Shown here: in pieces, positions 25,522 to 52,395 of the stretch
Layout of the letters: each line of letters starts with the position of its first letter
Numbering within the stretch: position 1 is the stretch's first letter
Notes under the pieces: model-generated
What the model saw: the letters and a program-made list of their open reading frames with translations, nothing else
Told to the model about the DNA's origin: nothing
Database searches by the model: none
Virus record (IMG/VR): IMGVR_UViG_3300007513_000004
Span: 1 to 64,000 of that record
Length of the DNA stretch: 64,000 nt
Reading direction: 5' to 3' (one strand)
Program-made: the position numbers and the translations under genes

Positions 25522-25855
25522 TTTGGTACTCCGATGTTTGTTAAGACTTATCTTTCAAATTGATTTAAAGCTAAATACATTTTACTTAGCCGGGTTGGAA
25601 TAGTCTGGAAATAAAAACTAAAATTATGTCAAGACTATTCTGTTCCAATTATAGATAAAAATAATAATATAAAATCTTGGTTGAATATCAAATTGATAAA
25701 CATTCTATTTGTCTGCCCCACTTATTGTCCGTTACAAACTGAGGACATACCGCTCCACATTGGAATAGTCGGTGCCAAACTTCTGTTAAATAATATCTTA
25801 ACAAATTTTGCTGGGTAGGATGGTAAGATAAACGATGGCCGGTTAGAATAGTATG

Positions 25856-26170
25856 TTAAACTTTTGCCCGAAGGATCGGCTCGTAACTCTCAGTCATGAA
25901 GTCTGCACCAAACATTTTCTCCCAACCTAGGTATCTCGTTTTATCGGAAAAGAAAATATCTAAACTATAATGATATTCATCATTAGTTCTGTCTTCTTTA
26001 ATTATCTTATCAGTATTTAATTCAACTTCCTTCATCCCAAAGTATCTGGCTTCAACGAAATAAACATAGTAATAGTTACCATTGCTCTTTTCAAATAAAG
26101 AAATATGGCCCAGCAAATCGCCTCCGCCTCCTGGAGATAAATTTACCATCGTTCTGTCGATAAGTTTCAT
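25856..26170 (-). CDS. hypothetical protein
   Basis: ORF; stop codon lies within a box (ends RAKV*). Confidence 0.65.
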   Translation of the reverse strand: MKLIDRTMVNLSPGGGGDLLGHISLFEKSNGNYYYVYFVEARYFGMKEVELNTDKIIKEDRTNDEYHYSLDIFFSDKTRYLGWEKMFGADFMTESYEPILRAKV

Positions 26171-26417
26171 AACAGAAGTTATGATATTATTAATAGGATG
26201 TTAAGTTTTTGCCCAGGATATTTCATAGCAGTTAAAGCTGGTCTCGAAATCGAGATCCAAGTTTAATTATCATTAGATGGGCATTTAGCGAGCCTTAAAG
26301 TCGCAGCTCCAGAGCTCATGAAGTTTTAAAGACTATTAGATAAGTATCTAATAAAGATTAAAATAAGGAGGCAGCCTGCCGGCACAACTTTAAGGCTCTA
26401 TACATCTGGATGTATTT

Positions 26418-26446
26418 TTCATTTTTAATTTTGCATCGACTACTTC
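26418..26446 (+). promoter_or_regulatory. CATC-type promoter (paralogue 1)
   Basis: TTCATT-TTTAATTTTGCATCGAC-TACTTC. Confidence 0.75.
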
Positions 26447-26499
26447 ATTTCGTAGGGCACAATGTCCTGCACCAACCAATGAGAAAAGGAAAAGATAAA

Positions 26500-27003
26500 A
26501 TGAGCGACAAGACTGCAATTTTTGAGAATGATAACACTGAGTCTCCTCTCCAGGTGATTCGTCAGACTATGAGCGTTTCGCTGTCCGATGGCGGCGCGGC
26601 CCAGGTTTCTTTTGCCACTAATCGTGGTAAGGGTTCCGGTGCCCAGGTTCTTGCTGTCGATGACTTTGCCGAGGTTGTGAGTACTCTCCAGGGTTACTCT
26701 GATGCTGGTATCGAAGAGCGTGAGGAAGAGCAGCTTTCTCCTGCTGATACGATTCGTCGTACCATCCGTATTGAGGATGGTGTGGTCAGCTTCCGTACCC
26801 GTTCGGGTAAGGGCGCGAAGCCTGCTAAGATTCCTGCGAGTCAGTTCGCGGAAGTCTGCGAGCTTCTGTCTGGTACTCTGTCTGCGGTGGAGGCTGCTGG
26901 TCAGTCTCTTTCTCCGGCTGATGAGACTGCTGATGAAGCAGCCGAAGAGCCTGCTATGGACGGAGACTACTCCGACTATGAGGACATGGGTGACGACGAG
27001 TAA
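26500..27003 (+). CDS. tandem-repeat protein, paralogue 1 of 3
   Basis: two internal repeats (SFATNRGKGSG / SFRTRSGKGAK); AGGA SD. Confidence 0.85.
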   Translation: MSDKTAIFENDNTESPLQVIRQTMSVSLSDGGAAQVSFATNRGKGSGAQVLAVDDFAEVVSTLQGYSDAGIEEREEEQLSPADTIRRTIRIEDGVVSFRTRSGKGAKPAKIPASQFAEVCELLSGTLSAVEAAGQSLSPADETADEAAEEPAMDGDYSDYEDMGDDE

Positions 27004-27024
27004 TTAATACTCTGAAACGAAAAA

Positions 27025-27052
27025 GCCCACCCGGTTTAACTTCCGGGTGGGC
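27025..27052. terminator. intrinsic terminator between convergent genes
   Basis: 10-bp stem GCCCACCCGG/CCGGGTGGGC with an A-tract on the left. Confidence 0.8.
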
Positions 27053-27182
27053 ACTCGTTTAATCTATATGTCAAACTTTTGCACGAGGATATGTTGTGCC
27101 GTCGTCTGCCTTATTCCAATTACCGCCTTCTCTTCTGGCTAATTGTGCTGGAGTTAACCTGTGTTCAGGAATGTCTTTTTCT

Positions 27183-27452
27183 CTATCTGCCCAACTGCGA
27201 GAAGACCCCACCGGTTTGTCCCAATCGAGAAAAAGACATTCCATCACCGATAGGTCCTGGAGCAGTTTCTTCAACCTCGCCCTCAGCCCCTACAAGCCAA
27301 CCAGGACCTTCGGCCCCTTCTACTGGGTTTCCATCAATATCTAATGGAATTCCTCCAGCAAATTTAAAAATTACTTTATCAATAACATCAGCTTCTTTCA
27401 CAAGGCCTCTGCTATCTAGTTCGCTGGCTAATTTAATTAATTCTACAATCAT
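27183..27452 (-). CDS. shared-leader family protein (possibly frame-disrupted)
   Basis: MIVELIKLASELDSRGLVKEADVIDKVIFKFAG. Confidence 0.75.
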   Translation of the reverse strand: MIVELIKLASELDSRGLVKEADVIDKVIFKFAGGIPLDIDGNPVEGAEGPGWLVGAEGEVEETAPGPIGDGMSFSRLGQTGGVFSQLGR

Positions 27453-27754: not shown

Positions 27755-27806
27755 AACTACCTCCTTTGTTTTTTATTATACTATTTGTCAAACTTTTGCC
27801 CAAGGG

Positions 27807-29874: not shown

Positions 29875-30078
29875 TTACTTGATAACTGATGATAAAACAG
29901 TATTAATTTTTTCTTGAAGATCATAGTTAAGTTTGATCTCAAGAATATTATTAATTTTCTTGCCTGCCTTTTCCAGCAAGCCCTTGGGTGTCTGCACACC
30001 CGCGCATGTGTTACAAGGGTCAACCTCGCCACATAACTCACAGGCTCCTTGGCCTGGATATACCGTTGTTCTATTCAT
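29875..30078 (-). CDS. small Cys-containing protein
   Basis: CELCG...CNTC; AGGAGG SD. Confidence 0.65.
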   Translation of the reverse strand: MNRTTVYPGQGACELCGEVDPCNTCAGVQTPKGLLEKAGKKINNILEIKLNYDLQEKINTVLSSVIK

Positions 30079-34342: not shown

Positions 34343-34358
34343 TGCAAAAACCGTGCCA
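34343..34358 (-). promoter_or_regulatory. sigma54 (-24/-12) consensus site
   Basis: TGGCAC-GGTTT-TTGCA upstream of 34285. Confidence 0.6.
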
Positions 34359-34412
34359 AATAATATTTGAGGACAGTTTGTGGTATTTGTTAAACTTTTG
34401 CCCGGGGATTAT

Positions 34413-34441
34413 TTGATTTCTGTTTTATCATCGACTACTTT
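34413..34441 (+). promoter_or_regulatory. CATC-type promoter (paralogue 2)
   Basis: TTGATT-TCTGTTTTATCATCGAC-TACTTT. Confidence 0.8.
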
Positions 34442-34934: not shown

Positions 34935-35069
34935 CGTACACACGCATGCACAATGTACGCACAATGCGTGCGTGTGCGCGAAGTCCCCTCCGCGCAGGGT
35001 AGCGTCGTTAATAGCGGCGCTACCCACTCTTTTAACCTATATGTCAAACTTTTGCCCAGAGGGCAATGG

Positions 35070-35399: not shown

Positions 35400-36047
35400 A
35401 TCACATTACTACCGTTAACTATCCATTTATTCAAACATGTTCCAAACTTCATAAGCCAAACATGTGCCAGCAAGAATCCATAGTGACGATAAAACGCCAG
35501 AGCCAGCAATAATCAATAATGAGTCCATCAAAACCTCCTTCGTCAAGGGCAGTCGTCGCCCTCTAACCCTATGTAGTCGGTGTAAATTTCTTGACAAAAA
35601 ACTTGTAATTACTTTACAAATTGATTTGTAAAACTTTTGCCCAGAACTGGACATTAAAAATCGAATTCTATTTTATCATCGGCTATTTTAGAGTGAAGGA
35701 AAAACGAAGGCAATGCAAAGAGGCAACCAGAATGGCCGTCACGAATCATATCTGATATCCAATTAGTGTTAGAATAGATATATTCAAAGAGCGGGCTGTC
35801 AAGCGGTTACTTTACCGAAAGCGGCGCTACTGTTTAGTCCTTGAGTACCGGGGAAACTCGGTACTCATTTATCTTTATTGTAAATTTTTTGCCCGAAGGG
35901 AAAACCCCGAAGGCACCTAGTACCTTCGGGGTTGAGTTTAATGCCATTGGCATGACCCGCTCACGGGTGAATTATCGGAATGTTTCTGTTTCCAGCCGCT
36001 TGACCCGTTGCAACGGCGCGGCATCTTGTTTATAGTAACCTCCTCGA

Positions 36048-37510: not shown

Positions 37511-37539
37511 AACATAGTTGATGTTAAAACAGAATCCAA
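37511..37539 (-). promoter_or_regulatory. CATC-type promoter driving the large ncRNA
   Basis: TTGGAT-TCTGTTTTAACATCAAC-TATGTT. Confidence 0.75.
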
Positions 37540-37630
37540 AAATTTTCGGGGAAAAGATTTACATAAATGTAAAAGTTTTGCCCCGATGAGTTTATCATAC
37601 GCGTCTGCGCAGATAAACTCAAAGGGAATT

Positions 37631-38328: not shown

Positions 38329-38567
38329 TTATTCTACTCCATGCGGCATTTTTGGTTGATAGCTATATTGCTCGCCGCTACTGCGATATAGCCGATGCTA
38401 AAATGAAAATCGAAAATCTCTATCTCTTTCTCTTTCTTCTCTCTCTGCTACAAAGTAGTTGATGTTAAAATCAAATTGAAAAATTGCCAAATGTCAATCT
38501 TTTGCCCCGTCTGTTTTTGAATTCTGTTTTATCATCAGATACATAGAAACATAAGGAGTAAAGCAAT

Positions 38568-38810
38568 ATGTTCATCACAAAAACTTCAATGATTTCTGGC
38601 AGAACCAATACTCTTTGGGTTGAAGGCTTGACCCAGGATATGCTAAAGGCATGGGAAAACGGAGCCTTGATTCAAGACGCCTTGGCAGGAATTCCGCAGG
38701 AATTGCGAGAATTCGTAATGACTGGTGTCTCCCCTGACGAATGGAATAGAACATTCCCGGAAGAGGAAGAAGAGGAATGGGACGAAGATGATAAGAGCCT
38801 TCAGAACTAG
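38568..38810 (+). CDS. conserved-type phage hypothetical protein
   Basis: LIQDAL...REFVMTGV...EW; promoter 38517-38545; AAGGAG SD. Confidence 0.8.
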   Translation: MFITKTSMISGRTNTLWVEGLTQDMLKAWENGALIQDALAGIPQELREFVMTGVSPDEWNRTFPEEEEEEWDEDDKSLQN

Positions 38811-38919
38811 TAAAAGTTTTGCCCAGTGTAGGTTTGCTTCCTGATAAGAAAATATACCGAGAGGGCTGAAAATTTCAACTTTATTTTAGCATCAAATACA
38901 TTTAGACAGGAGAAAAGAA

Positions 38920-39258: not shown

Positions 39259-39450
39259 ATGGCAAGAGGAATCAACAGGGGCCATCAACGGCGAAGCGAA
39301 ATTGCAGAACGAGTAAAAGTTCTCGCAGAGGAAAGGGCCACGCGCACACCTGCGCAACAACTGGCCTTGCTGGATAAGCGGTTGGGCAAGGACACAGGCG
39401 CACGCAAGGAGCGTGCCAAGTTGACCGCCGAAATAGAATCTAAAAAGTAA
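39259..39450 (+). CDS. small basic protein
   Basis: TPAQQLALLDKRLG...GARKERAKL. Confidence 0.75.
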   Translation: MARGINRGHQRRSEIAERVKVLAEERATRTPAQQLALLDKRLGKDTGARKERAKLTAEIESKK

Positions 39451-39470
39451 ATCTTTTGCCCGGAGCCAGA

Positions 39471-39686: not shown

Positions 39687-39845
39687 AATTAAAGTTCAGG
39701 CCCAGGAATAATTTAATTTACTTTATTCAATATGTAAAGTTTTTGCACAAGTGCTTATGAATACATAATAATAATGAATATCATAAATAAAGCAATAGAA
39801 GAAAAAGCACCAGTTGCAATTATTACATTACACCATCTGATGAAT

Positions 39846-40568: not shown

Positions 40569-40792
40569 TTTTCTTTTCCTTTCGTTCAAATTCACGTTCA
40601 AATTCACGCTTGCGACGTTCTTTGATTTGAGCAAGCAGATGCTCCTGCCTGCTCCGGTCTGGCGCGTATACCACTCTAATTCCCCACATTTCCTGCCTCC
40701 ATGCTTACATATGAATGTAAGTGATGATAAAATGAAAATCAAAAATATATGTCAATTTATTGCCCGGAGGGCGGCTATAAGGAAAGCCAGAT

Positions 40793-41708: not shown

Positions 41709-41795
41709 GGTTTTCTCCCTTGTTACAAAGTAACTGATGGAAAAATGAAAATGAAAAAAGGCGCAAAACTTTTGCCCAACAATTTAAAAGCAAGC

Positions 41796-41829
41796 TGGCA
41801 TAGTTCTTGCTAATGCAAGAATCGTGCCA
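41796..41829. promoter_or_regulatory. head-to-head pair of sigma54 consensus sites
   Basis: TGGCAT-AGTTC-TTGCT (+) and TGGCAC-GATTC-TTGCA (-). Confidence 0.7.
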
Positions 41830-42032
41830 ATTAAATATGTTAAAGTTTTGCCCGGCAAAGTGTAGGGGCAGGCCCTACACCCAACCCCCTTACTCTTCCC
41901 TGCTACCTTTAGGATGGCACCAGGGTCGAACCACTAATGGTAGTTGCCAAATCTACACGGGGCCTCCCCGAGGCTGGAACTGAACCAGCTTCACCATTAG
42001 CGCACTTCTCGGGCCGACCGGCAGCCCTTGTC

Positions 42033-42428
42033 TTATTCTTCGGAAGAAGACTCTTCCATGGCCTTCCACATCTTAGCTTGCAGTCGTTTTGAGTTTGGAA
42101 ACCGCATTGCCTCAAGTTGTGCTAACTCCAGCTTTACCTCTGGAGTCGCATCGACCTCGCCATCAAAAATGGCGAGATGCAGGTCGGCAGCTTCTTTGCT
42201 CATCGGACTATGCTCTTGAGCTTTGCCATTGATATACATGATTGGAGCTTCACCTTGAAACATCTCAAGAAAGCCAACAAGCTGTCTCCTATGTGCTGCC
42301 TTCTTTTCTTCAGGCGACATAGCTTCATATTCCGCATCCCGCCTGTGCTGCTCAGCAGTCTTCGCCACAGGCTCTGTTCCTTTCCAGTCTTTCTTTTTAC
42401 TCACACACTCTCCTTTGTTGTTGTGCAA
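42033..42428 (-). CDS. hypothetical protein (true start probably GTG about 42403)
   Basis: AAGGAG SD inside the annotated ORF. Confidence 0.7.
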   Translation of the reverse strand: MHNNKGECVSKKKDWKGTEPVAKTAEQHRRDAEYEAMSPEEKKAAHRRQLVGFLEMFQGEAPIMYINGKAQEHSPMSKEAADLHLAIFDGEVDATPEVKLELAQLEAMRFPNSKRLQAKMWKAMEESSSEE

Positions 42429-42665
42429 AAGTTTTTCATATTGTGATTAGGGTTGATGACTCTTCTTATAGAAGAATGAAACAGTGCGGCTTGCCCACGT
42501 CCTTTGCCATCTTTGGGTTCGAATCCCTTTGCTTGCGCGCAAGCAGGAAGAGCCCCTAGCTCCTCCCTTTGTATGAAAAAGTCGGCAGAGTATTGTCCCC
42601 CCGCTCTGCCAGCGGTCGATACGTCGATCTATACAAATGTAGTTGATGATAAAATGAAAATGAAA

Positions 42666-43341: not shown

Positions 43342-43646
43342 TTGTTGTCTCCCTATGTGACAATGTAACTGATGATAAAACAGAAATGAAATAATACCGT
43401 GCAAAAACTTAACATGTGTGTGCAAATCTTTTGCACGGTGGTGCAGCCTAACCCACCCTTTAGGCTGCACCGATTTTCTGCAGGGGGTAGGCCCCGTCAC
43501 ACATTACGCGCAGTTAAGATAATGCCAACCGAAGAAGACCAAGGCAGTCCAGGCTGCAACATCAATAGCTACCACAATCGGAAGCAGGGTCAAACGATGA
43601 GCTAAAACCCATTCAATAGCAGTAGTGCGCCACATAGTTTCCTCCA

Positions 43647-43967: not shown

Positions 43968-44188
43968 AACCCTCCAGGTTAGTACTCCTATGTAGCTGAT
44001 GATAAAACAGAGTTGAGATTTTTATGCAAATCTTTTGCCCAGGGCTAATTTGGTTTCTGTTTTATCATCAGCTACATAAAGACATAAGGAAAGGAACACT
44101 GTTCGCGCTGCCTCCCCATAGGGAATAAGGTGGCCGTCTGGAATCGAAAGATTAGGTTCCCAACCTTTTGACTCACAAAGGAGATTCA

Positions 44189-44446: not shown

Positions 44447-44454
44447 GACTTTTT

Positions 44455-44530: not shown

Positions 44531-44544
44531 TTTATCAAACTTTT

Positions 44545-44629
44545 GCCCGAGTGGTGGAATCGGTATACACAGCAGACTTAAAATCTGCCGCCTTTGGGCT
44601 TGCCGGTTCGAGTCCGGCCTCGGGTACCA
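44545..44629 (+). tRNA. tRNA-Leu(TAA)
   Basis: class II cloverleaf, loop CT-TAA-AA, CCA end. Confidence 0.95.
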
Positions 44630-44778: not shown

Positions 44779-44808
44779 TTTTTCTTTCACCAACCAGGAA
44801 TAAATCAA

Positions 44809-44988: not shown

Positions 44989-44993
44989 AACAA

Positions 44994-45010
44994 CCGGGGC
45001 TTTGCCCCGG
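44994..45010 (+). terminator. intrinsic terminator
   Basis: CCGGGGC-TTT-GCCCCGG followed by a T-rich tail. Confidence 0.7.
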
Positions 45011-45049
45011 GCCTTTCTTTATCTTAAATGTCAAACTTTTGCCCGAGGG

Positions 45050-45343
45050 CTACCGAGGGAGTACCCATATATCATCGGATGAAGGATCTCCATATTGTGT
45101 ACACACGCACTTGGATCGAGTAACAGACTCCATCCTTGTTCCAAGATCATCGCACGATTGTTTACATTGAGTTATCGTAGCTTCCTTCAAATTGCAATTT
45201 GACATAAGCATCCCAGCGGTGACCGTGAGGCAAATATAGAATACAGATTTGCTGATTGCTCCAGTTACGGAGATTATCAACTGTCTGTCCGTGTCTGCAT
45301 GCTTATCCATTCCTTCCTTCCTTATACTCTCCATGAAACCCAC
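45050..45343 (-). CDS. membrane-anchored Cys-containing protein
   Basis: TM plus three-Cys ectodomain; stop abuts a box. Confidence 0.65.
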   Translation of the reverse strand: MGFMESIRKEGMDKHADTDRQLIISVTGAISKSVFYICLTVTAGMLMSNCNLKEATITQCKQSCDDLGTRMESVTRSKCVCTQYGDPSSDDIWVLPR

Positions 45344-45992
45344 AACAGTGAAAGTTTATTCCTTTAATCTGCCAATCCTGCAAAACATGATGGTGACCAA
45401 AATACCAATCCACAGGCGCATGGTCACAATAGTCCATGACATTCTGGAGATTTTTGGGGGTGGGATTGGTGTTTCGGTTGAGTCTGTCAATCTCCACACA
45501 AATTGGCGCATCATGGGTTACCACAATTTCTGGCTTCGCCATTTCCATTGACTCGAAGAATGTGTTGAATTCTGCGGCGGAGGGACTTTCCTCGGCCCAC
45601 CAAGAAACTCCTTCGACTCGATGTGCCCGGTCTGTCGATTCGGCACCTCCGAAGAAAATATGCGACTTTCCATCGAGGTCGATAGCCGAACCACGGATGA
45701 CATAAAAGCAGCCTGGCGCCAACTCCACGGTTTTGTCGGAATCTTGGGCCGCCTGCAATTCAAGCCATTTAGTCCAATTTTCATGATTTCCACCGCAGGT
45801 ATACCACGCCGGGCCGGCTCGGCCTTGCCTCTCCCTCTTTGCAAAATACTTTGCGATTGGGCAATTGCTGGCCCAAAGAGCCCCAAAGTCTCCGACTTGA
45901 ACCACAATATCAACACCTGCTGCAATAGCAGCCCGGTCAATTGCAGCAACGTCATCAACCCTGCCATGAATATCGCCAACGTAAAAAATCAC
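45303..45992 (-). CDS. calcineurin-like metallophosphoesterase
   Basis: GDIHG, GDFG, GNHE, THDAP, GHHH; promoter 46008-46036. Confidence 0.9.
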   Translation of the reverse strand: MIFYVGDIHGRVDDVAAIDRAAIAAGVDIVVQVGDFGALWASNCPIAKYFAKRERQGRAGPAWYTCGGNHENWTKWLELQAAQDSDKTVELAPGCFYVIRGSAIDLDGKSHIFFGGAESTDRAHRVEGVSWWAEESPSAAEFNTFFESMEMAKPEIVVTHDAPICVEIDRLNRNTNPTPKNLQNVMDYCDHAPVDWYFGHHHVLQDWQIKGINFHCCGFHGEYKEGRNG

Positions 45993-46101
45993 TCTGCCTC
46001 CTGTTATATGGTAACCGATGGATAAATAGAAATCAAAAAGAAATGTAAAAGTTTTGCCCGGGCTTATTTCAAATCTGTTTGAGCATCGGTTACTTTACGA
46101 T

Positions 46102-46395
46102 ATGGAAAAGAACATTCAGACTTTGGTGGAGTTGTGGCGGGATGCCGAGGCCAGGAAGTTGGAGGCCGACCGTAACGAGTTTGGTGCCAAGATGGAGGTT
46201 CGACGGGCTTTGTCCAAGTCTCTTGGAAGCTACACTGAACCGGGAACCAGTGGCGTTGGAATCTGCGCTGCGGCCATCGATATTGGTCATTGGGCCTGTG
46301 AAACGAGCCCTGTCGCGGTCTGCGTCTATGATGATTGGTCCGACCCGATTCATGACAACTGCCTTTACTGCAACAACCCAGAGGAACGAAAATGA
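46102..46395 (+). CDS. hypothetical protein with C-terminal Cys/His motif (probably leaderless mRNA)
   Basis: promoter 46068-46096, ATG 5 nt after the -10; C..SP..VCVYD..DP.HD.CL.C..PEERK. Confidence 0.7.
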   Translation: MEKNIQTLVELWRDAEARKLEADRNEFGAKMEVRRALSKSLGSYTEPGTSGVGICAAAIDIGHWACETSPVAVCVYDDWSDPIHDNCLYCNNPEERK

Positions 46396-46679
46396 CTTGG
46401 AAAGCCTTTCTTAAATCAAAACTGCGCGAGCGGTCCATCAGTAATCAGACAGTATATATTTCTGTCTTTGTAGCATTCTTCGCCGGGTGGGTCGTGGGAT
46501 AGGCATTTTAATGCCAATAATAAAAACTAAATTATTTACGTCCCCGCCAGCCAATCGTGGGACTGCTCCTTCCAAATTACGAACGCGAATTATAAAATCC
46601 TTTAGCGCAAACCGCCGGGCAAAAAGTTGACATTTATAATAAAAAGAGGCTGCCGAGGCAGCCTCGATATTTAGGCAAT

Positions 46680-47129
46680 TTAGCAACCGTATCGGCGCTC
46701 CATCGCAACCTCCGCTTCGTATTCGGCCTCCCACCGTGCTCGTTCTTCCAAGTCCTGTAGAACCTTCCGATTATTATCGGAGAGCCTATCCTCGTCAACG
46801 ACTGGCGAAACTCGCTTGCCGCCACATTCGTAGCAGGTCACGTCATAGCTTCCAGAAAAATAGTCCCGCTCGAAATCCGGGTCATCATAGAAGTCATCGG
46901 AGGTCAATCCGTTGCAATCGATGGAAGGATTGACGTGGGAGCCTCGACCGGAGCAGGTGGCGCACACCTCAAACTTTACGGGCAGCAGCTCAAAGAATTC
47001 CTCGCCATCCTCATCCTCAATGGCGACTTGAACCATCATCTGGCTCTCGTCAAAGGAATTATACCAAGTGCCACGGCGGGCCGCTCGGGTGCGGGGGTCG
47101 TTGTAATAGTTGTAATCATCGATGGACAT
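46680..47129 (-). CDS. phage protein with DnaJ-like CxxCxGxG motifs
   Basis: CATCSGRG, CYECGG; promoter 47152-47180. Confidence 0.8.
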   Translation of the reverse strand: MSIDDYNYYNDPRTRAARRGTWYNSFDESQMMVQVAIEDEDGEEFFELLPVKFEVCATCSGRGSHVNPSIDCNGLTSDDFYDDPDFERDYFSGSYDVTCYECGGKRVSPVVDEDRLSDNNRKVLQDLEERARWEAEYEAEVAMERRYGC

Positions 47130-47222
47130 TAGACACTCCTCTGTGTATGGATGAGTAAACGATGGAAAAACAAAGTTGAAATAAGCATGTGCAAATCTTT
47201 TGCCCAGAGTAATATTTATCTT

Positions 47223-47363
47223 ATGAAGTGGTTAGATGACATAAAACAGAAACTATGGTGGAGAGGAATTACTGGCAAGGATCTTGCAGTACTTACGCTC
47301 ATGCCCGTATCTTTCGTAGCAATTATATTGTTTTTAATTTGGGGGCTGGCGCAAGGTATGTAA
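47223..47363 (+). CDS. small membrane protein
   Basis: TM ORF between two boxes. Confidence 0.5.
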   Translation: MKWLDDIKQKLWWRGITGKDLAVLTLMPVSFVAIILFLIWGLAQGM

Positions 47364-47378
47364 ATATTTTGCCCGGCG

Positions 47379-47582
47379 TTATAATAAATAAACAAGGCTG
47401 GCGACTAAAACAACACCAGCAGAGAATATTGCCATTGGAACATAGGCTCCAGCGGTGAACGAAAGTGTTGCGCCCGCAGCAGATATCATAAAGGCAAAGT
47501 ACATAACTATAGCTATCAACTCCCCAATATGTTCTGGAACGCCCATTGCCCAGCTTCTATATTTTGCAATTAAGTTATTCAT
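47379..47582 (-). CDS. small two-TM membrane protein
   Basis: hydrophobic ORF between boxes. Confidence 0.65.
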   Translation of the reverse strand: MNNLIAKYRSWAMGVPEHIGELIAIVMYFAFMISAAGATLSFTAGAYVPMAIFSAGVVLVASLVYLL

Positions 47583-47641
47583 TTAACGATGATACTCCGG
47601 GCAAAAAATTGACACAAAGGTTGAACCAAAAGGCTCTCAGT

Positions 47642-47857
47642 CTAAAAGTCATCCCGAGAAACCTTCTTGCGGCAAGCCTTCTTGCTCTGCTCCTTACGAG
47701 CATCACCGTGAGAGCCGGAACCGTTCCGAAGAATCAGTCCAAGCATATCAAGGTTGCGAGTCTTACGTCGCTTACCCTCTCCGCGCATGGTGGCGCGAAG
47801 TTCCCGCTCCTCACGGCGGGCATTACGCTTGCGGTTCTTTCGTGCTGTCTTGGCCAT
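47642..47857 (-). CDS. small Arg/Lys-rich protein
   Basis: GGAGG SD; promoter 47877-47905. Confidence 0.75.
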   Translation of the reverse strand: MAKTARKNRKRNARREERELRATMRGEGKRRKTRNLDMLGLILRNGSGSHGDARKEQSKKACRKKVSRDDF

Positions 47858-47933
47858 GATAGCCTCCTTCTGTCTCTATGTAACCGATGGAGAAATAGAA
47901 ATCAAAAATGTGTTGTAAAACTTTTGCCCAGGC

Positions 47934-48368
47934 TCACCGTCTAATTTTTACATTAGGTATGTCAGCAATCCGGTCAGCCAGTAAATCTCGACCATCAGGA
48001 CAAGAGCGATTCAACATAGTCAGTATAGACTGAATCTCAACCCAAAGCTGTTCTGGGAGCACAAGACAGGAGTATCCAAGATAAACCTTGACCCAATCCT
48101 CTCCCAAGCTACGAAAGGCGCAATCGGATGCAGCGTAAAGATGCTCCGGCTTTACCGAGAAGATTGCGCCCTTTACTGTAAATTCGATGGGTTCCGTATC
48201 AGTAAAGGCAAAGCCACCAGGGTCGAGGTGGGCAACATCAATAGCGGTTTTTTCCTCTGGAGTAACACTATATCGTTCAGCTATGTCATCCTCACACACG
48301 CTCGTACCAACGAGTGAAATGTGCAAACGAATTTTGGAATCTGCGGGGTAACGGATTGACTCAAGCAT
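47934..48368 (-). CDS. hypothetical protein
   Basis: GGAGG SD; promoter 48384-48412. Confidence 0.75.
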   Translation of the reverse strand: MLESIRYPADSKIRLHISLVGTSVCEDDIAERYSVTPEEKTAIDVAHLDPGGFAFTDTEPIEFTVKGAIFSVKPEHLYAASDCAFRSLGEDWVKVYLGYSCLVLPEQLWVEIQSILTMLNRSCPDGRDLLADRIADIPNVKIRR

Positions 48369-48515
48369 ACTTCCTCCTGTGTGTATGTATGTGATGATAA
48401 AATAATACTGGAAAAGTCTGGGGAAAAGATTGACATACGTGTGAATGTTTTGCCCAAATGGGAGTGGGCCCGGTGGAATTACCCCAATTCCACCGGGCGG
48501 CGTGTGCCCATCACC

Positions 48516-48986
48516 TCACACGCCCTCTCGCTCCCAAGGGGGACGCGGGTTACCATTTCTCCAATCATGCTCCCAACGCTCACGCATGTTAGAGATACCC
48601 GTAGCATCAACCCCGTGCTGATTGCGAGTTGCCAACTCCTCATCTGTGCAGCCTCCATCATAAAGAGAGACTACCGAAACCTCGTATCCATGTTCCTCTG
48701 CCATACGCAAGTACGGCTCCATTTCCCATCGCTGGGTAAAAGTATTGTGAACCACCACGGTCGCTGCCAGTCGATTCCTCATGGAATTTTCGGCCTGCTC
48801 CTGACACCAAAAGTGTGCAGCGGGCAGCTTTCGAGGGTTAAAATTGTAAATTCCATCCTCATCAAGAAAGAAATCATCAGCGGCAAAGAAGCACTTGCCA
48901 AGCGGTGCGCCTACGTTCAGTAGCATCCGACCAAGCCTTGTCTTTCCTGAACCGGAAATTCCGCGAACCAAAATAAGTCTATACAT
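48516..48986 (-). CDS. P-loop kinase/NTPase (AAA_33, N4BP2-like)
   Basis: LVRGISGSGKT, AADDFF, AHFWCQ, VVHNTFT..WE..PY. Confidence 0.88.
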   Translation of the reverse strand: MYRLILVRGISGSGKTRLGRMLLNVGAPLGKCFFAADDFFLDEDGIYNFNPRKLPAAHFWCQEQAENSMRNRLAATVVVHNTFTQRWEMEPYLRMAEEHGYEVSVVSLYDGGCTDEELATRNQHGVDATGISNMRERWEHDWRNGNPRPPWEREGV

Positions 48987-49067
48987 GCGTGTCCTCGTTG
49001 GGCAAAAAATTGTCATACTTCTCCCTTGGAGGCCCCCGGCACAATGCCGGGGAACCTCGGGAGGCGG

Positions 49068-49511
49068 CTACTTCTTGACGGCTGCTCCATCAAACTTGAC
49101 GTAGCCTTTGGTAGCAATCCGGGGAAGGTTATCGACAATCTCCGAATCAAACATATCGAGCATCGTCCGATACTTGACCTGCTCATCGGCGGTCAACGAG
49201 CTAACCCGCTTCTCCATCGCAGCTTTGGTCAGACCGGAAAGCCGATTCCAAAGTTCGATAATGTGGTCCGGCGCATACTCTCGCGTGCATCCAAGCTCTT
49301 GAAGGAGCATACAGATAGTCGGAACCGACCGTGCGCGGTTTGTGCCTGCGCGTGTACTGGATGGTCCTCGGGAGAGGACACCTTCCACCTCGGCGGTGAA
49401 CTTGACATGCACATCCGACTCGGGTACAAGCACGGATTCGTCGTTGCAGGATTGAAGGTTGATAACTTTGGCGAGGGCCAACTGTTCGATGGGCGAAAGG
49501 GTCTGGGACAT
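49068..49511 (-). CDS. hypothetical protein
   Basis: AGGAG SD; promoter 49559-49587. Confidence 0.75.
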   Translation of the reverse strand: MSQTLSPIEQLALAKVINLQSCNDESVLVPESDVHVKFTAEVEGVLSRGPSSTRAGTNRARSVPTICMLLQELGCTREYAPDHIIELWNRLSGLTKAAMEKRVSSLTADEQVKYRTMLDMFDSEIVDNLPRIATKGYVKFDGAAVKK

Positions 49512-49640
49512 TGATTGTCTCTCCTAAAGAGGGTGGGTTTGTCTCCCTCTTACATCATAATGTAGCCGATGATAAAACAGAATCGAAAAATGAAATGTTA
49601 AAGTTTTGCCCAGCGGTCTGCAATAATCATGCCAAAAAGT

Positions 49641-49674
49641 TGGCACAGTTCTTGCATTAGCAAGAAGCATGCCA
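49641..49674. promoter_or_regulatory. head-to-head pair of sigma54 consensus sites
   Basis: TGGCAC-AGTTC-TTGCA (+), TGGCAT-GCTTC-TTGCT (-). Confidence 0.7.
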
Positions 49675-49752
49675 GTTAATTAAGTTAAAGTTTTGCCCGA
49701 TTAAATAAATAATTAACTTAATCTGGGCAAAAAGTTGACATTTAAAACAAAT

Positions 49753-50021
49753 AAAAAGAAGGGGGGCAAAGGCCCCTCTGGGTAGCGCGGCTTGTGTGCA
49801 AAACAGCAGCAGGGGAGCTTGCTCTTTGAGAGGTGTGTGGTTCGCGACCCGAACAAATCTCGTGACATCCCTTGGCTTTTCAGTTTGCCTTGCCTTCCCA
49901 GAGGGGCATAGCTGCTCATTACTTTACCGGGGGTCTATCCTGTACCCCGAACAGTTACACGGTATGAGTCAACCGTGCGGTGTATAACTAGTATTCCACC
50001 GTTTCTGAATCTCTCTCCTTG
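49753..50021 (-). ncRNA. candidate 270-nt structured RNA
   Basis: promoter 50028-50056, multiple stems, terminal hairpin plus U-tract, no credible ORF. Confidence 0.55.
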
Positions 50022-50093
50022 TGTTCTAAAGTAATTGATGCAAAAATCGAAATGAAAAACATATTTGCAAAGTTTTTGCCCATACGTAAGGCT

Positions 50094-50127
50094 TGGCACA
50101 CTTTTTGCTAATGCAAGAAACATGCCA
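50094..50127. promoter_or_regulatory. head-to-head pair of sigma54 consensus sites
   Basis: TGGCAC-ACTTT-TTGCT (+), TGGCAT-GTTTC-TTGCA (-). Confidence 0.7.
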
Positions 50128-50181
50128 ACAAACATGTCAATGTTTTGCCCTTGGGCAAAAGTTTGACACAAAGCATAAAAG

Positions 50182-50205
50182 AAGGCCGGGCATATGCCCG
50201 GCCTT
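50182..50205 (-). terminator. intrinsic terminator of ardC
   Basis: AAGGCCGGGC stem followed by CTTTT on the minus strand. Confidence 0.75.
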
Positions 50206-50234
50206 GCGTATGGCCCCACTCGGGGCGTCTGGCC

Positions 50235-51176
50235 CTACTTGCGCTGGCCCTCCCCCTTGTCGATGAGGTAGCGCATGACCTTGCCCGCTTCATTCGCGGC
50301 CCGCTGAATCACGGTAGGGTCATCCTTGAGAGCCTTCCGCCAGTTGGCAAGGTAGGCCACATGGTTGTCCATCAAACCCTCTCGCTTGACTCCCAGATAG
50401 GCGCATGTGAACGCCGCGCCAATCTCGGCAACCAACTCCTCGTAAGCATACGCCTCCGAGCCGAAGCCCGTGAACTTGACGATGCCATCCCGGTTGAGTC
50501 GGTCCTTTGCACCTGACCAGTGGGCGTGCTCATGGATGGTAGTGGCCCAAAAATCAGCAACAGTGGTGAAGGCTCCGGCCTCGGGCACCATGATGTAGTC
50601 CTCGCGAGGGGAGTAGAAAGCACGCCCGCCGCCCGTGCGGAAATCCGCGTCGATACCTTTGACAAGTGCAGCCGCCGCCTCATGGCCCACCTTTGGGTCA
50701 ACCTCTGAAATCTCGGCAGACGGTAGGGGGTTCGTCGTTTGCTGGTTGTTGAAAGTGTACGAGCTTCCAAATCCGATGAACTTTGTGGACCCCTTGACCA
50801 AGAGACTCGCGCCACAGGGCTTGCACTTTTTTGCAAATCCACATGGGCGGCCACAACTGTTGCAGGCCAGCTTCGGGAAGAAAATAGGAGTCCCCTTCTC
50901 GCCTTTGCGCACGTAGTTGCCGCTCTTTTGCCACTGGCCAAACCCGGCCCAACGGTTGTCACCAAACTGAACCCCGGCCATCATCAGCATAAAGCCATTG
51001 AAGTTTCCGCCGTAGGCGCGGCCCGTCAGGATGTTGATTGGCATCCCACCAGCAAGGGACCTATCCCACGGCATAATCCAAGGGGTGCCGTCCTCGGGCG
51101 GGTTGTCGAGGGCTTCGATAATCTGCGCGGCTATACGCTCGCACGTCTCTTGAATCTTGTCGTTGGGCTTGCTCAT
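50235..51176 (-). CDS. ardC: ArdC-family antirestriction / ssDNA-binding protein with an inserted Zn-ribbon
   Basis: WIMPW, N..TGR.Y.G.N, VRKGEKG, RAFYSP..D.I, HEHAHW, YAYEELVAEIGAAF; promoter 51225-51253. Confidence 0.9.
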   Translation of the reverse strand: MSKPNDKIQETCERIAAQIIEALDNPPEDGTPWIMPWDRSLAGGMPINILTGRAYGGNFNGFMLMMAGVQFGDNRWAGFGQWQKSGNYVRKGEKGTPIFFPKLACNSCGRPCGFAKKCKPCGASLLVKGSTKFIGFGSSYTFNNQQTTNPLPSAEISEVDPKVGHEAAAALVKGIDADFRTGGGRAFYSPREDYIMVPEAGAFTTVADFWATTIHEHAHWSGAKDRLNRDGIVKFTGFGSEAYAYEELVAEIGAAFTCAYLGVKREGLMDNHVAYLANWRKALKDDPTVIQRAANEAGKVMRYLIDKGEGQRK

Positions 51177-51432
51177 GGTGGTCCTCCGGGGACTAAAGCG
51201 GGTATTGACGGGGGCTTACATACATGAGTAACCGATGCTCAAATAGAAATGAAAAAACCAATTGCCAATCTTTTGCCCAGACAGGTGTGCTTCTTTATGC
51301 AAAAACCATGCCAACCCAATTGACAAAGTTTTGCCCAGACTCAGACGCATTTCCTTGCAAGAACCATGCCAATGTGTATGAAAATGTTTTGCCCAAATGT
51401 AAAAACATATTTTACAAAACCTCGACAGAGGT

Positions 51433-51466
51433 TGGCATGGTTCTTGCTAATGCAAGAACTGTGCCA
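51433..51466. promoter_or_regulatory. head-to-head pair of sigma54 consensus sites
   Basis: TGGCAT-GGTTC-TTGCT (+), TGGCAC-AGTTC-TTGCA (-). Confidence 0.7.
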
Positions 51467-51567
51467 TATGTTATGCAAATGTTTTGCCCAATGCTTTGGG
51501 CAAAAAAATGACATGTGTACGAAAATACACACGTCTTTACATTTTCTTTACATCGGACAAAAGAAAA

Positions 51568-51595
51568 CCCCTCACCGCCTTTCGGCGGTGAGGGG
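51568..51595 (-). terminator. intrinsic terminator
   Basis: 12-bp stem CCCCTCACCGCC-GAAA-GGCGGTGAGGGG plus TTTTCTTTT. Confidence 0.88.
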
Positions 51596-51623
51596 GTAGG
51601 AGGTTAGCCCCGCCCCGGCCCTA

Positions 51624-52322
51624 CTATGCGTAGGGGATGGGGAGGGGGGAGGAGGCGTCAAACTCGACCCAATCGGCGTCCAGCCACATGTCGGCGGGGA
51701 CGTGCCGCCACTCGATGCGAACTCGGCGGTAGCGGCCAGCGTAGGCACCGGAGCCGAAGGGACGGAGCCAGCACACGGGCTTGCCTTTCGGGGTGGTCAG
51801 GTCCTGACCCTCGGCCCAGACCTTGCTGGCATCGGCGCGGCGCATCATCAGCACCCCGTCAATCTCGGTCAGGAGGCAGACGTAAACCGGGACACCAGCA
51901 TCGACGGCGGCAAGGAAGGCGGCCAGCGGGGTTCCGGCCTTGGCACAGTCGGCCTCAGCATCCCAGACGCCGCTGGTCAGGTCGCGATTCCCGTAGGGGT
52001 CGCCGGTGCTTCCCTTGAAGTTGACCGGGACCATTTCGACAATCGCCGGGTAGGGGTGGCCCGCGAGCGACGGGTGAACCACGGGCCACACGTCATCAAA
52101 GAGGCCCAGACCCCGGCCACGCTGCAAGGGGCGGCCCAATCGGTCCAGGTCGCCATTCTGCGCGACACCATCCCGGCACGGAGGGACCGCGACACCAGCC
52201 GCTTCCATCCAATATGCGACGTGCTTGTACCCGTCGCCCACTCCGGCACCCATTCCGCCCGCTTCCGCGAGGCGGCAGCCGCCCTCAATCTCAAGTCCGT
52301 TTCTGTCGTTCTTCTTAGTCAT
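51624..52322 (-). CDS. hypothetical protein, very GC-rich
   Basis: GGAGG SD; promoter 52339-52367; terminator downstream. Confidence 0.8.
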   Translation of the reverse strand: MTKKNDRNGLEIEGGCRLAEAGGMGAGVGDGYKHVAYWMEAAGVAVPPCRDGVAQNGDLDRLGRPLQRGRGLGLFDDVWPVVHPSLAGHPYPAIVEMVPVNFKGSTGDPYGNRDLTSGVWDAEADCAKAGTPLAAFLAAVDAGVPVYVCLLTEIDGVLMMRRADASKVWAEGQDLTTPKGKPVCWLRPFGSGAYAGRYRRVRIEWRHVPADMWLDADWVEFDASSPLPIPYA

Positions 52323-52395
52323 AGTGACCTCCTACACATAGGTAAGTGATGCTCAAACAGAAATGAAAAACTATTGCCCAAACAAAACGAAAGGT

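What the first reader, a model, noticed from the sequence alone, without database searches (positions are those of the whole stretch)
25853..52380. About 40 copies of a genome-polarised box TGTnAAAnTTTTGCCC that punctuates gene units
Seen: about 34 copies on + and 6 on -, almost all intergenic. Orientation is fixed to the chromosome, not to the adjacent promoter: the same strand precedes + promoters (34396, 38500, 44033, 46052) and follows - promoters (41770, 47922, 49604). Many copies sit right at a stop codon, supply the stop (25856 and 27071 ORFs both end RAKV*), or continue as GCCC-N1-3-GGGC. Density rises towards 52.4 kb. Reversed copies read GGGCAAAAA(A/G)TTGACA, close to the GTCA-N6-TGAC dyad bound by the sigma54 activator FleQ. 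Inference: a directional protein-binding or recombination signal, either for DNA entry/organisation or for cassette shuffling analogous to PeSL elements of T4-type phages.
Basis: partly seen in the sequence, partly recalled or inferred. Interest (0 to 1): 0.8.

Follow-up and report, generated by a model that had tools for sequence, protein, structure and literature searches.

The report
Repeated linker box between phage gene cassettes
A 16-21 bp asymmetric DNA box, repeated 45 times in one 26-kb stretch of an uncultured 223-kb marine phage, sits next to the promoters and terminators of small self-contained accessory-gene units, and related phages in other ocean samples have gained, lost and reordered those units at these repeated control sequences.

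Summary
TGTNAAANTTTTGCCC occurs 46 times at up to 2 mismatches against 1.2 expected. Forty-five copies lie in 25854-52379 (33 on +, 12 on -), and 42 are intergenic or at gene ends. No copy occurs in a further 28.5 kb of the same contig.

The box is one part of a composite intergenic linker. It lies 12-17 nt upstream of a conserved ~40-nt phage promoter motif (PROM) pointing either way, and 7-8 nt upstream of sigma54-type -24/-12 elements. It also follows terminator hairpins. Promoter-side boxes keep the + orientation whatever the promoter direction. Terminator-side boxes follow the terminated gene.

Related contigs and runs show insertions, deletions, replacements and reorderings of the units. 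These breakpoints fall on box, PROM or sigma54-like repeats. Two insertions are flanked by direct box copies. The box alone is not enriched for breakpoints over other intergenic positions.

Best reading: an asymmetric protein-binding site of a promoter/terminator linker, which also supplies short homology for cassette shuffling. This is a new variant of the PeSL principle of T4-type phages. The binder and its regulatory sign are unknown. The DNA-entry and FleQ ideas are not supported.

The parts
25854..52379 (.). Hyperplastic cassette region holding all 45 boxes, 26 strong PROM promoter motifs and all 14 sigma54-type elements. G+C is 0.42-0.55, against 0.34-0.41 in 1-26 kb and 0.37-0.44 in 52-64 kb. 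Most ORFs are orphans.
25854..25869 (+). Box that supplies the stop codon of ORF 25856-26170(-), which ends RAKV*.
26199..26214 (+). Box 29 nt upstream of the start of ORF 25856-26170(-).
27025..27084 (+). Terminator hairpin of gene 26500-27003(+), followed by a co-oriented box at 27069-27084. Relative L149 diverges at 27086.
27786..27801 (+). Box between two leftward genes, 6 nt after one stop codon and 32 nt before the next start.
34344..34432 (.). Linker: leftward sigma54-type element 34344-34358, box 34388-34403, rightward PROM 34419-34432.
34997..35057 (+). Terminator hairpin, then a co-oriented box at 35042-35057.
35627..35680 (+). Box 35627-35642 and rightward PROM 35667-35680.
35842..35894 (+). 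Terminator hairpin, then a co-oriented box at 35879-35894.
37520..37583 (.). Leftward PROM 37520-37533, reversed box 37548-37563 and forward box 37568-37583, arranged tail to tail.
38394..38536 (.). Two leftward PROMs (38394, 38461), one box at 38492-38507, and rightward PROM 38523-38536. One box is shared by divergent promoters.
38809..38893 (+). Box overlapping the stop codon of gene 38568-38810(+), then rightward PROM 38880-38893.
39446..39461 (+). Box overlapping the stop codon of gene 39259-39450(+). A GGAG ribosome site and the next start codon follow directly.
39733..39748 (+). Box after gene 39471-39686(+).
40723..40765 (.). Leftward PROM 40723-40736 and box 40750-40765. Relatives L122 and L139 diverge one base after the box.
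41736..41853 (.). Leftward PROM, box 41762-41777, face-to-face sigma54-type pair 41796-41829, and box 41838-41853. Four relatives diverge at 41855/6.
42423..42438 (-). Reversed box 18 nt upstream of the start of gene 42033-42404(-). Synteny with L139 breaks inside it.
43371..43436 (.). Leftward PROM 43371-43384, reversed box 43399-43414, and a near-palindromic box at 43420-43436 that matches on both strands.
43998..44069 (.). Divergent PROMs sharing box 44025-44040. The GCCC-A-GGGCTAA continuation is the vestige of a second, inverted box that relative L133 still has in full.
44533..44548 (+). Box between tRNA-Lys and tRNA-Leu. Its GCCC forms the first four bases of tRNA-Leu. L139 carries a 234-nt box-RBS-ORF-box insertion here.
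44994..45044 (+). Bidirectional terminator hairpin and box 45029-45044. L139 has a 361-nt extra unit here, flanked by two direct box copies.
46017..46087 (.). Divergent PROMs sharing box 46044-46059.
46617..46665 (-). Leftward terminator 46646-46665, followed by a co-oriented reversed box at 46617-46632.
47161..47205 (.). Leftward PROM and box 47190-47205. In runs X6 and X7 the box start is joined to the end of PROM 49581.
47359..47374 (+). Box 5 nt after the stop codon of gene 47379-47582(-).
47599..47614 (-). Reversed box 16 nt upstream of the start of gene 47379-47582(-), with a GGAG ribosome site between them.
47886..47929 (.). Leftward PROM and box 47914-47929. Contig joints lie at 47904 and 47929, and loose ends at 47879/80.
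48393..48455 (.). Leftward PROM, reversed box 48420-48435 and forward box 48440-48455, arranged tail to tail.
49000..49052 (-). Leftward terminator hairpin, followed by a co-oriented reversed box at 49000-49015.
49568..49776 (.). Linker: leftward PROM, box 49596, sigma54-type elements 49620(-), 49641(+) and 49660(-), box 49683, reversed box 49725, leftward terminator 49763-49776.
50037..50205 (.). Linker: leftward PROM, box 50066, face-to-face sigma54-type pair 50094-50127, head-to-head box pair 50135-50150 and 50153-50168, and the terminator of the ArdC gene 50182-50205.
51234..51595 (.). Linker: leftward PROM; boxes 51263, 51321, 51379 and 51474 (the first three 58 nt apart); sigma54-type elements 51299, 51357, 51433 and 51452; reversed box 51498-51513; terminator 51568-51595.
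52348..52430 (.). Last linker: leftward PROM, degenerate box 52364-52379, and sigma54-type pair 52396-52430.

Best explanation
The box is the sequence-specific protein-binding core of a repeated intergenic linker. The linkers separate small accessory-gene units, each with its own promoter and often its own terminator, in one hyperplastic region of a 223-kb marine phage.

Shown:
- The site is asymmetric, with consensus A-t-A-TGTmAAwnTTTTGCCC-R-R. It has two conserved blocks, TGTnAA and TTTTGCCC, about one helical turn apart.
- It lies at a fixed 12-17 nt from the conserved phage promoter motif PROM on either side, and 7-8 nt upstream of sigma54-type -24 elements.
- It follows terminator hairpins.
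- Most copies lie between a terminator and a promoter, or between divergent promoters, so most are probably not transcribed.
- Some copies form head-to-head inverted pairs, and many single copies keep a GGGC vestige of a lost partner.

Inferred:
- A phage or host DNA-binding protein occupies these sites and co-regulates or insulates the units. It could be a monomer with two reading heads, or an architectural bending protein acting on the AAAnTTTT core.

Shown by comparison:
- The same linkers are the places where related phages differ by insertion, deletion, replacement, reordering and inversion of units.

Inferred mechanism of exchange:
- Recombination occurs at short homologies supplied by all three repeats (box, PROM, sigma54-like). 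The mostly direct orientation of the boxes favours excision and insertion over inversion. This would also explain why the orientation is fixed to the chromosome and not to the promoter.
For: - Excess and confinement: 46 matches against 1.18 expected. No copy occurs in contig 64-92.5 kb. One weak hit occurs in the other 37.5 kb of the window.
- Logo from 103 distinct copies in the window and relatives.
- Spacing to PROM and to the sigma54-type elements, and the intergenic position.
- Orientation statistics.
- PROM also occurs without a box outside the region, for example upstream of the tmRNA gene. The box is therefore an added element and not part of the core promoter.
- Relatives at 67-77% identity keep the boxes and the arrangement.
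- Head-to-head ancestry of the GCCC-N-GGGC continuation.
- Junctions: insertions in L139 are flanked by direct box copies, and divergence starts 0-2 nt after GCCC at 27086, 40766 and 41855.
- L143 has the units in another order.
- Contigs of four other runs join at box, PROM or sigma54-like edges in 26 of 46 end clusters, against 16.8% expected, p = 1e-9.
- Cargo is typical of a plastic accessory region: ArdC anti-restriction, SprT-like, metallophosphoesterase and an ATPase, while most of the 32 ORFs scanned have no PHROG match.
- Three paralogous genes lie in different units and orientations.
Against: - No binder was found. No HU/IHF, helix-turn-helix or recombinase domain appeared among about 110 window proteins.
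- No transcript data exist, so promoter activity, start sites, and the activating or repressing sign are all inferred.
- Against an intergenic-only null the enrichment of breakpoints is weak (p = 0.057 for any repeat; 0.32 and 0.10 for the box alone).
- Logan contigs break and can mis-join at repeats, so some joints may be assembly artefacts. The JGI contigs with identical junctions come from at least three assemblies (L122, L138, L139), but from what appears to be one sample series.
- One divergent relative lacks the box next to an otherwise conserved PROM, so the box is dispensable at some promoters.
Confidence: 0.5

Rival explanations
1. Dedicated site-specific recombination site. The box, or the head-to-head double box, is the crossover site of a phage recombinase that inserts and excises circular gene units, in the manner of an integron.
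For: - Two insertions in L139 are flanked by direct box copies, one with nothing but 16 bp of box in common.
- Most box-side junctions fall 0-2 nt after GCCC.
- The direct-repeat polarity of 33:12.
- Units of the form box-RBS-ORF exist in both orientations (47599, 42423, 39446).
Against: - No integrase or recombinase domain appears in the window.
- Breakpoints use PROM and sigma54-like repeats as often as the box, and the box alone is not enriched over intergenic background.
- The spacing between inverted box arms is 2, 8 or 26 nt in the window and 3 nt in relative L133, which is unlike a fixed overlap region.
- Junctions at the GCCC edge are expected anyway, because PROM conserves the other side.
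Confidence: 0.15
2. Binding site of a host nucleoid protein such as IHF or Fis, or an UP-like element. It would bend the DNA upstream of the sigma54-type and PROM promoters, with no phage-specific binder.
For: - TGTCAAnnnnTTG resembles the IHF consensus WATCAANNNNTTR, and copy 44533 matches it perfectly.
- The site is asymmetric and has an AAAnTTTT core, a type of tract known to be intrinsically bent (from my own knowledge).
- It lies just upstream of sigma54-type promoters, where IHF sites usually lie (the usual IHF position is from my own knowledge).
Against: - Only 12 of 45 boxes are within one mismatch of the IHF consensus.
- G2 is 98% conserved where IHF has A, and position 4 is variable where IHF has its most conserved C.
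- T9, T10 and GCCC are nearly invariant, yet they are not part of the IHF motif.
- About 26 bits of information is far more than nucleoid-protein sites carry.
- PROM works without the box elsewhere in the genome.
- The host is unknown.
Confidence: 0.12
3. Stoperator-like silencing site. A phage repressor binds the asymmetric sites and blocks both initiation and elongation across the cassette region, as in cluster A mycobacteriophages.
For: - The site is asymmetric, has dozens of copies, lies in short intergenic spaces and overlaps stop codons.
- Its two blocks one turn apart fit a monomer with two DNA-reading domains (PMC9283540).
- All 9 boxes met by rightward transcripts are co-oriented with them (my tally).
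Against: - For leftward transcripts, the first box met is co-oriented in 7 cases and opposed in 12 (my tally). The defining link between orientation and transcription direction therefore fails.
- The sites are confined to one region and not spread over the genome.
- No repressor-like protein and no sign of lysogeny appears in the window.
Confidence: 0.1
4. Selfish miniature repeat of the REP/BIME or MITE kind, which has spread through intergenic DNA and has no role for the phage.
For: - Extragenic inverted pairs occur, and single copies look like decaying pairs.
- The copies cluster after gene ends.
Against: - The fixed 12-17 nt and 7-8 nt spacing to promoters is preserved in relatives at about 70% identity.
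- There is a strong strand bias.
- No transposase was found.
- No copies were found in unrelated genomes.
Confidence: 0.06
5. Polar signal for DNA entry, packaging or chromosome organisation, read by a translocase along one strand.
For: A 33:12 strand bias that is independent of promoter direction.
Against: - The box is confined to 26.5 kb of the 92.5 kb examined.
- A quarter of the copies are reversed, in a context-dependent way.
- The precise spacing to promoters and terminators is not expected of a translocase signal.
Confidence: 0.03

Closest known systems
PeSL (promoter-early stem-loop) regulatory cassettes of T4-type phages (Arbiol et al. 2010, PMC2839356; Comeau et al. 2014, PMC4122927)
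   Same: - Repeated composite promoter/terminator motifs lie in the intergenic spaces of a hyperplastic region rich in orphan genes.
- Stop codons of upstream genes sit in the A+T-rich part upstream of the promoter.
- Indels and replacements between close relatives end in the motifs.
- Each unit is transcriptionally self-contained.
- GCCC/GGGC inverted motifs occur at the junctions. The 2010 paper recalls GGGC/GCCC at T4 deletion endpoints.
   Different: - The most conserved part here is a discrete 16-21 bp asymmetric box upstream of the promoter. It is not the sigma70 hexamers or a G/C stem-loop.
- The promoter is an unusual ~40-nt motif with a conserved spacer.
- Sigma54-type elements are part of the linkers.
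- Terminators are separate hairpins next to only some boxes.
- The box orientation is largely fixed to the chromosome.
- No T4 hallmark gene was seen in the window, and the phage encodes an RpoH-like sigma factor.
- Mini-circles were not tested.
Operators and stoperators of cluster A mycobacteriophages (L5 gp71 and relatives; PMC9283540, PMC6550527)
   Same: An asymmetric site of 13-16 bp occurs in dozens of copies, in short intergenic spaces and over stop codons. Its two blocks suit a monomer that reads two successive major grooves.
   Different: Orientation does not follow the direction of transcription on the main coding strand. The sites are regional, not genome-wide. No repressor was found. 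There is no sequence similarity.
Integron attC/attI cassette system
   Same: Small gene units are bounded by a repeated site. Box-ORF-box alternates with a single box between relatives, and the repeats are mostly direct.
   Different: No integrase was seen. Most units carry their own promoter and terminator and lie in both orientations. The site is 16-21 bp, not a 57-141 bp folded attC. Exchange also occurs at other repeats.
IHF sites and UP elements upstream of sigma54 and sigma70 promoters
   Same: An asymmetric A/T-cored site just upstream of the promoter core, partly matching WATCAANNNNTTR.
   Different: The conserved G2, T9, T10 and GCCC, together with the variable position 4, do not fit the IHF consensus. 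The information content is far higher than for such sites.
REP/BIME extragenic palindromes of enterobacteria
   Same: Extragenic repeats after gene ends, found as inverted pairs and in clusters.
   Different: The box is phage-borne, precisely spaced from promoters, mostly a single arm, and has no RAYT-type transposase nearby.

Membership tests
PeSL regulatory cassette | Repeated intergenic motif concentrated in a hyperplastic region rich in orphan genes | tested here: met
   All 45 boxes lie in 26.5 kb. None occurs in 64-92.5 kb and one weak hit occurs in the rest of the window. Most of the 32 ORFs scanned have no PHROG match.
PeSL regulatory cassette | Contains a strong sigma70-like early promoter with an A+T-rich upstream region | tested here: inconclusive
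   PROM has TTGAWT and TACNTT hexamers 17 nt apart and sits 15-60 nt upstream of ribosome sites. Its conserved spacer is atypical, and its activity and sigma factor cannot be tested here.
PeSL regulatory cassette | Contains a stem-loop terminator as part of the motif | tested here: not met
   Hairpin terminators adjoin only about 10 of the 45 boxes, and they are separate, non-homologous hairpins.
PeSL regulatory cassette | Indel and replacement breakpoints between related phages map to the motifs | tested here: met
   Of 46 end clusters, 26 lie at linker repeats (p = 1e-9 against a uniform null; 0.057 against an intergenic null).
PeSL regulatory cassette | Circular excision products (mini-circles) | not testable with these tools
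   This needs inverse PCR or long reads from infected cells or virions.
Mycobacteriophage stoperator | Asymmetric site, more than 20 copies, in short intergenic spaces | tested here: met
Mycobacteriophage stoperator | Orientation strictly correlated with the direction of transcription | tested here: not met
   Rightward transcripts meet a co-oriented box in 9 of 9 cases. For leftward transcripts the first box is co-oriented in 7 cases and opposed in 12 (my tally).
Mycobacteriophage stoperator | Sites spread across the genome, with a cognate HTH immunity repressor | tested here: not met
   The sites are confined to one region. No HTH protein was found in the window. The remaining 131 kb was not examined.
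Sigma54 -24/-12 promoter (for the box itself, read on the reverse strand) | GG and GC ten bases apart within TGGCAC-N5-TTGC | tested here: not met
   The reverse strand reads GGGCAAAAnTTTnACA. The GG is in register, but the -12 GC is AC in about 80% of copies. True matches to the consensus lie next to the boxes.
IHF binding site | WATCAANNNNTTR | tested here: not met
   Only 12 of 45 boxes are within one mismatch, and the conserved positions differ.
FleQ box | GTCA-N6-TGAC dyad | tested here: not met
   Only one TGTCAA/TTGACA half-site is present, in 38% of copies, and no second half is in register.
Integron cassette site | Tyrosine integrase next to the array, with promoterless cassettes in one orientation | tested here: not met
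   No integrase domain was found. Most units have their own PROM and lie in both orientations.

The most novel reading that the evidence does not exclude
The box, or its head-to-head double form, is the crossover site of a dedicated and still unidentified phage recombination function. The 26-kb region would then be a phage-borne, integron-like platform that captures and reshuffles self-expressed anti-defence and host-takeover genes. Sigma54-type promoters and a conserved phage promoter would serve as plug-in expression signals.
Probability: 0.12. Interest if true: 0.85.

Novelty: new variant of a known kind. Interest (0 to 1): 0.6.

Why it matters
- Accessory and anti-defence genes of large phages turn over quickly, and how they move is poorly understood outside T4-type phages.
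- Here an uncultured marine phage lineage shows the same principle with different parts. Standard control linkers flank small genes, and natural variants from several ocean samples differ exactly at those linkers.
- The box is a sharply defined 21-bp asymmetric site that invites a direct search for its binder.
- Fourteen sigma54-type promoter matches cluster inside the same phage region. I found no precedent for this in one literature search, and it points to a host with RpoN.
- The linkers could also serve as sequence tags for finding phage hyperplastic regions and their cargo in metagenomes.

Tried and rejected
- Box as a sigma70 promoter on either strand. The TTGACA-like end and the TTGCCC end never have a -10 hexamer at 16-19 nt (inspection). 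Rejected.
- Box as a FliA/sigma28 -35 (TAAAGTTT). No GCCGATAA follows at the right distance, and the GCCGATG in PROM points the wrong way. Rejected.
- Box as an RNA element. Most copies lie between a terminator and a promoter, or between divergent promoters. GCCC-N1-3-GGGC cannot form a hairpin. Rejected.
- CRP, NifA (TGT-N10-ACA) and Fis similarities are only partial, so I treated them as unspecific.
- Megablast of 12 kb against GenBank phages gave only a tRNA hit.
- The exact 15-mer of PROM in IMG/VR gave only chance hits.
- The box+PROM pattern in GTDB genomes gave 16 chance hits without boxes. This yielded no host clue.
- An exact-protein look-up for walking along the contig failed. I walked with the search for related loci instead, reaching 92.5 kb of 223 kb.
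- Rfam found nothing for the noncoding stretches.
- No RNA run holds the phage at a useful level, so start sites could not be mapped.
- A literature search for phage sigma54 promoters found nothing relevant.

Full report
**Source**

The window is the first 64 kb of IMG/VR contig IMGVR_UViG_3300007513_000004, which is 223,402 bp long. Fetched pieces of that contig are 100% identical to the window, and the coordinates coincide. Marine and seawater metagenomes hold the sequence fully or in part.

The phage encodes an RpoH-like sigma factor (3893-4732, -), a tmRNA, nine tRNAs, an ATP-dependent DNA ligase and an ArdC-type anti-restriction protein. Nothing closely related is in GenBank phages.

**The observation**

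TGTNAAANTTTTGCCC at up to 2 mismatches occurs 46 times against 1.18 expected. Forty-five copies lie in 25854-52379, 33 on + and 12 on -.

- Forty-two copies are intergenic or at a gene end.
- The GCCC-N0-3-GGG(C/G) continuation occurs in 9 of 45 copies against a 2.2% background.
- Half of the copies lie in the last 6.4 kb.
- I fetched 28.5 kb more of the contig (64-92.5 kb) and found no box there.

The box is therefore a regional feature, at least within the first 92.5 kb.

**Anatomy of the box**

A logo from 103 distinct copies in the window and its relatives gives A-t-A-TGTmAAwnTTTTGCCC-R-R. It has two nearly invariant blocks, TGTnAA and TTTTGCCC, about ten base pairs apart, around an AAAnTTTT core. 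The site is truly asymmetric, because T1 and T3 are conserved where a palindrome would need G.

The box is one of three repeated elements in the intergenic spaces.

- **PROM.** This is a roughly 40-nt promoter-like motif, approximately tTTTTcATTTCTGTTTTATCATCrGyTACaT. It lies 15-60 nt upstream of ribosome sites and start codons. There are 26 strong copies in the region, 18 leftward and 8 rightward. Weaker copies without a box lie elsewhere, for instance upstream of the tmRNA gene. PROM is therefore a general promoter motif of this phage, and the box is an addition specific to this region.
- **Sigma54-type element.** TGGCAY-N5-TTGC occurs 14 times against 0.34 expected, all in 34.3-52.4 kb. Nine copies point leftward like most genes. 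The five rightward copies exist only as face-to-face partners of leftward ones. The arms of these pairs differ exactly at the positions that the sigma54 consensus leaves free. This argues for recognition as DNA and against an RNA hairpin (inspection).

**Position of the box relative to its neighbours**

- Thirteen boxes lie 12-17 nt from a leftward PROM. Five lie 14-24 nt from a rightward PROM. Three serve both promoters of a divergent pair (38492, 44025, 46044).
- Six boxes lie 7-8 nt upstream of a leftward sigma54-type element.
- Ten boxes follow a terminator hairpin or a gene end. All ten are co-oriented with that gene (4 of 4 on +, 6 of 6 on -; Fisher p = 0.005), and nine of the ten are of the TGTCAA subtype.
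- Promoter-side boxes are + in 15 of 18 cases, with no relation to promoter direction (Fisher p = 0.52). The three reversed ones each have a + box just behind them.

Inverted pairs also occur, both head to head (50135/50153, 51474/51498, 49683/49725) and tail to tail (37548/37568, 48420/48440). A relative at about 72% identity (L133) has a full head-to-head pair where the window has one box followed by A-GGGCTAA. The GCCC-N-GGGC continuation is therefore the remnant of a second, inverted box.

**Comparative evidence**

A pattern scan of JGI metagenome contigs found eleven related loci that carry many boxes. Loci at 67-77% identity keep the boxes and their arrangement.

Synteny with the closer relatives breaks as follows:

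- one or two bases after a box at 27086, 40766 and 41855;
- inside a box at 42430;
- at 44532/44548, where L139 has a 234-nt insert of the form box, ribosome site, small ORF, box, between tRNA-Lys and tRNA-Leu;
- at 45003/45010, where L139 has a 361-nt extra unit between two direct box copies.

L143 carries the same units in another order.

I laid contigs of four other runs on 46600-52500. They show joints and loose ends at these places:

- box edges: 47190, 47929, 49595, 50151, 51280, 51490, 51513;
- inside PROM: 47879/80, 47904, 49581, 51224-7;
- sigma54-like edges: 49674, 50093/4, 51431-3, 51466.

These joints include back-joins, opposite-strand joins and joins to distant linkers of the window.

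The statistics are as follows.

| Data set | Ends at repeats | Uniform null | Intergenic-only null |
|---|---|---|---|
| Run contigs, any of the three repeats | 26 of 46 clusters | 16.8% expected, p = 1e-9 | p = 0.057 |
| Run contigs, box alone | 12 of 46 clusters | p = 4e-4 | p = 0.32 |
| BLAST ends of close relatives, within 5 nt of a box | 4 of 18 | p = 0.005 | p = 0.10 |

The units are clearly exchanged at the linkers, but the box is not a privileged crossover point within them.

Two caveats apply. Short-read contigs tend to end at repeats and can mis-join there. The longer JGI contigs repeat the same junctions in at least three assemblies (L122, L138, L139), but these appear to come from one sample series.

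**Cargo**

The units encode ArdC, a SprT-like protease, a metallophosphoesterase, a GP88-family protein and a small ATPase/kinase. Most of the 32 ORFs scanned have no PHROG match. Three paralogous genes, at 60-67% amino-acid identity, sit in separate units and in both orientations. G+C is 0.42-0.55 in the region, against 0.34-0.41 in 1-26 kb and 0.37-0.44 in 52-64 kb. This fits acquired DNA.

**Interpretation**

The box is best read as a specific protein-binding site that belongs to a promoter/terminator linker. Four features support this:

- its asymmetry and information content;
- its placement, in most copies, between a terminator and a promoter or between divergent promoters;
- its fixed distance from two kinds of promoter, in either orientation;
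- its preservation in diverged relatives.

Whether the bound protein activates, represses, insulates or merely bends the DNA cannot be decided here. No candidate binder was found among about 110 window proteins. There was no HU/IHF, helix-turn-helix or recombinase domain, and only one Hc1 histone-like hit.

The same linkers act as short homologies for unit exchange. This is the PeSL principle described for T4-type phages (PMC2839356, PMC4122927). A largely direct orientation of the boxes would favour excision and insertion over inversion. It is also the simplest explanation for a polarity fixed to the chromosome. This step is inference.

**What it is not**

- The box read on its reverse strand keeps the GG of a sigma54 promoter in register, but has AC instead of GC at -12 in most copies.
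- Only 12 of 45 copies come within one mismatch of the IHF consensus, and the conserved positions differ.
- There is no FleQ-type dyad.
- The stoperator rule that orientation follows transcription fails on the main strand, with 7 boxes co-oriented and 12 opposed (my tally; rule from PMC9283540).
- There is no integrase, most units carry their own promoter, and the spacing between inverted arms varies (2, 8 and 26 nt in the window; 3 nt in L133). This argues against an integron-type core site, although that reading is not excluded.
- A genome-wide translocation or entry signal is contradicted by the regional confinement.

**Verdict**

The feature is a new variant of a known kind. Its distinctive points are a discrete polar box, an unusual conserved promoter and a cluster of sigma54-type promoters in a phage.

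Noticed in passing
window 34344-52430 (14 sites, e.g. 41796-41829, 49641-49674, 50094-50127, 51433-51466, 52396-52430): Near-consensus sigma54 -24/-12 elements (TGGCAY-N5-TTGC) occur 14 times against 0.34 expected. Five pairs are arranged face to face with 4-5 nt between the -12 elements. No enhancer-binding protein or rpoN gene is in the window. These elements imply a host with RpoN.
   Followed up: partly
window 2280-2293, 14203-14216, 18509-18522, 29888-29901, plus 26 sites in 26.4-52.4 kb: A conserved ~40-nt promoter-like motif (PROM) has an unusually conserved spacer, TCTGTTTTATCATC. It is also present without a box upstream of the phage tmRNA gene. The sigma factor that reads it is unknown. 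The phage's own RpoH-like sigma (3893-4732, -) is a candidate.
   Followed up: partly
window 36690-37505 (- strand): An 816-nt stretch without an ORF lies downstream of leftward PROM 37520-37533. It folds better than shuffles (z = -3.7 with 20 shuffles) and has no Rfam match. Relative L149 lacks 36031-36831. It may be a large structured RNA.
   Followed up: partly
window 49757-50030 (- strand): A promoter-to-terminator unit of about 270 nt has no convincing ORF. Its fold z-score is only -1.0 and it has no Rfam match.
   Followed up: partly
window 42480-42560 and 41900-41945: Intergenic stretches carry tRNA T-arm-like sequence (GGTTCGAATCC and GGTCGAACC), but ARAGORN and Rfam do not call them. 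They may be tRNA remnants. Relative L139 has a shorter sequence at the first place.
   Followed up: no
window 26500-27003(+), 34530-34934(+), 37888-38328(-): Three paralogous orphan genes (60-67% amino-acid identity) lie in separate units and in both orientations. DNA similarity is limited to the coding part.
   Followed up: partly
window 1878-2227 (- strand): A phage-encoded one-piece tmRNA has the tag peptide ANNNYYYEPVALAA.
   Followed up: no
window 39259-39450(+) or 47642-47857(-): One small basic protein of the cassette region matches the Hc1 histone H1-like family (E = 2e-12). I did not resolve which of the two basic candidates it is.
   Followed up: partly
window 19350-19856(+): A MotA/TolQ/ExbB proton-channel-family protein lies on the + strand island at 18.6-20.4 kb.
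   Followed up: no
window 26000-52000 against the flanks: G+C rises stepwise from about 0.37 to 0.55 towards 52 kb. It falls back to 0.44 in the next 2-kb bin and 0.41 in the one after. The richest units (ArdC 50235-51176 and ORF 51624-52322) look recently acquired.
   Followed up: no
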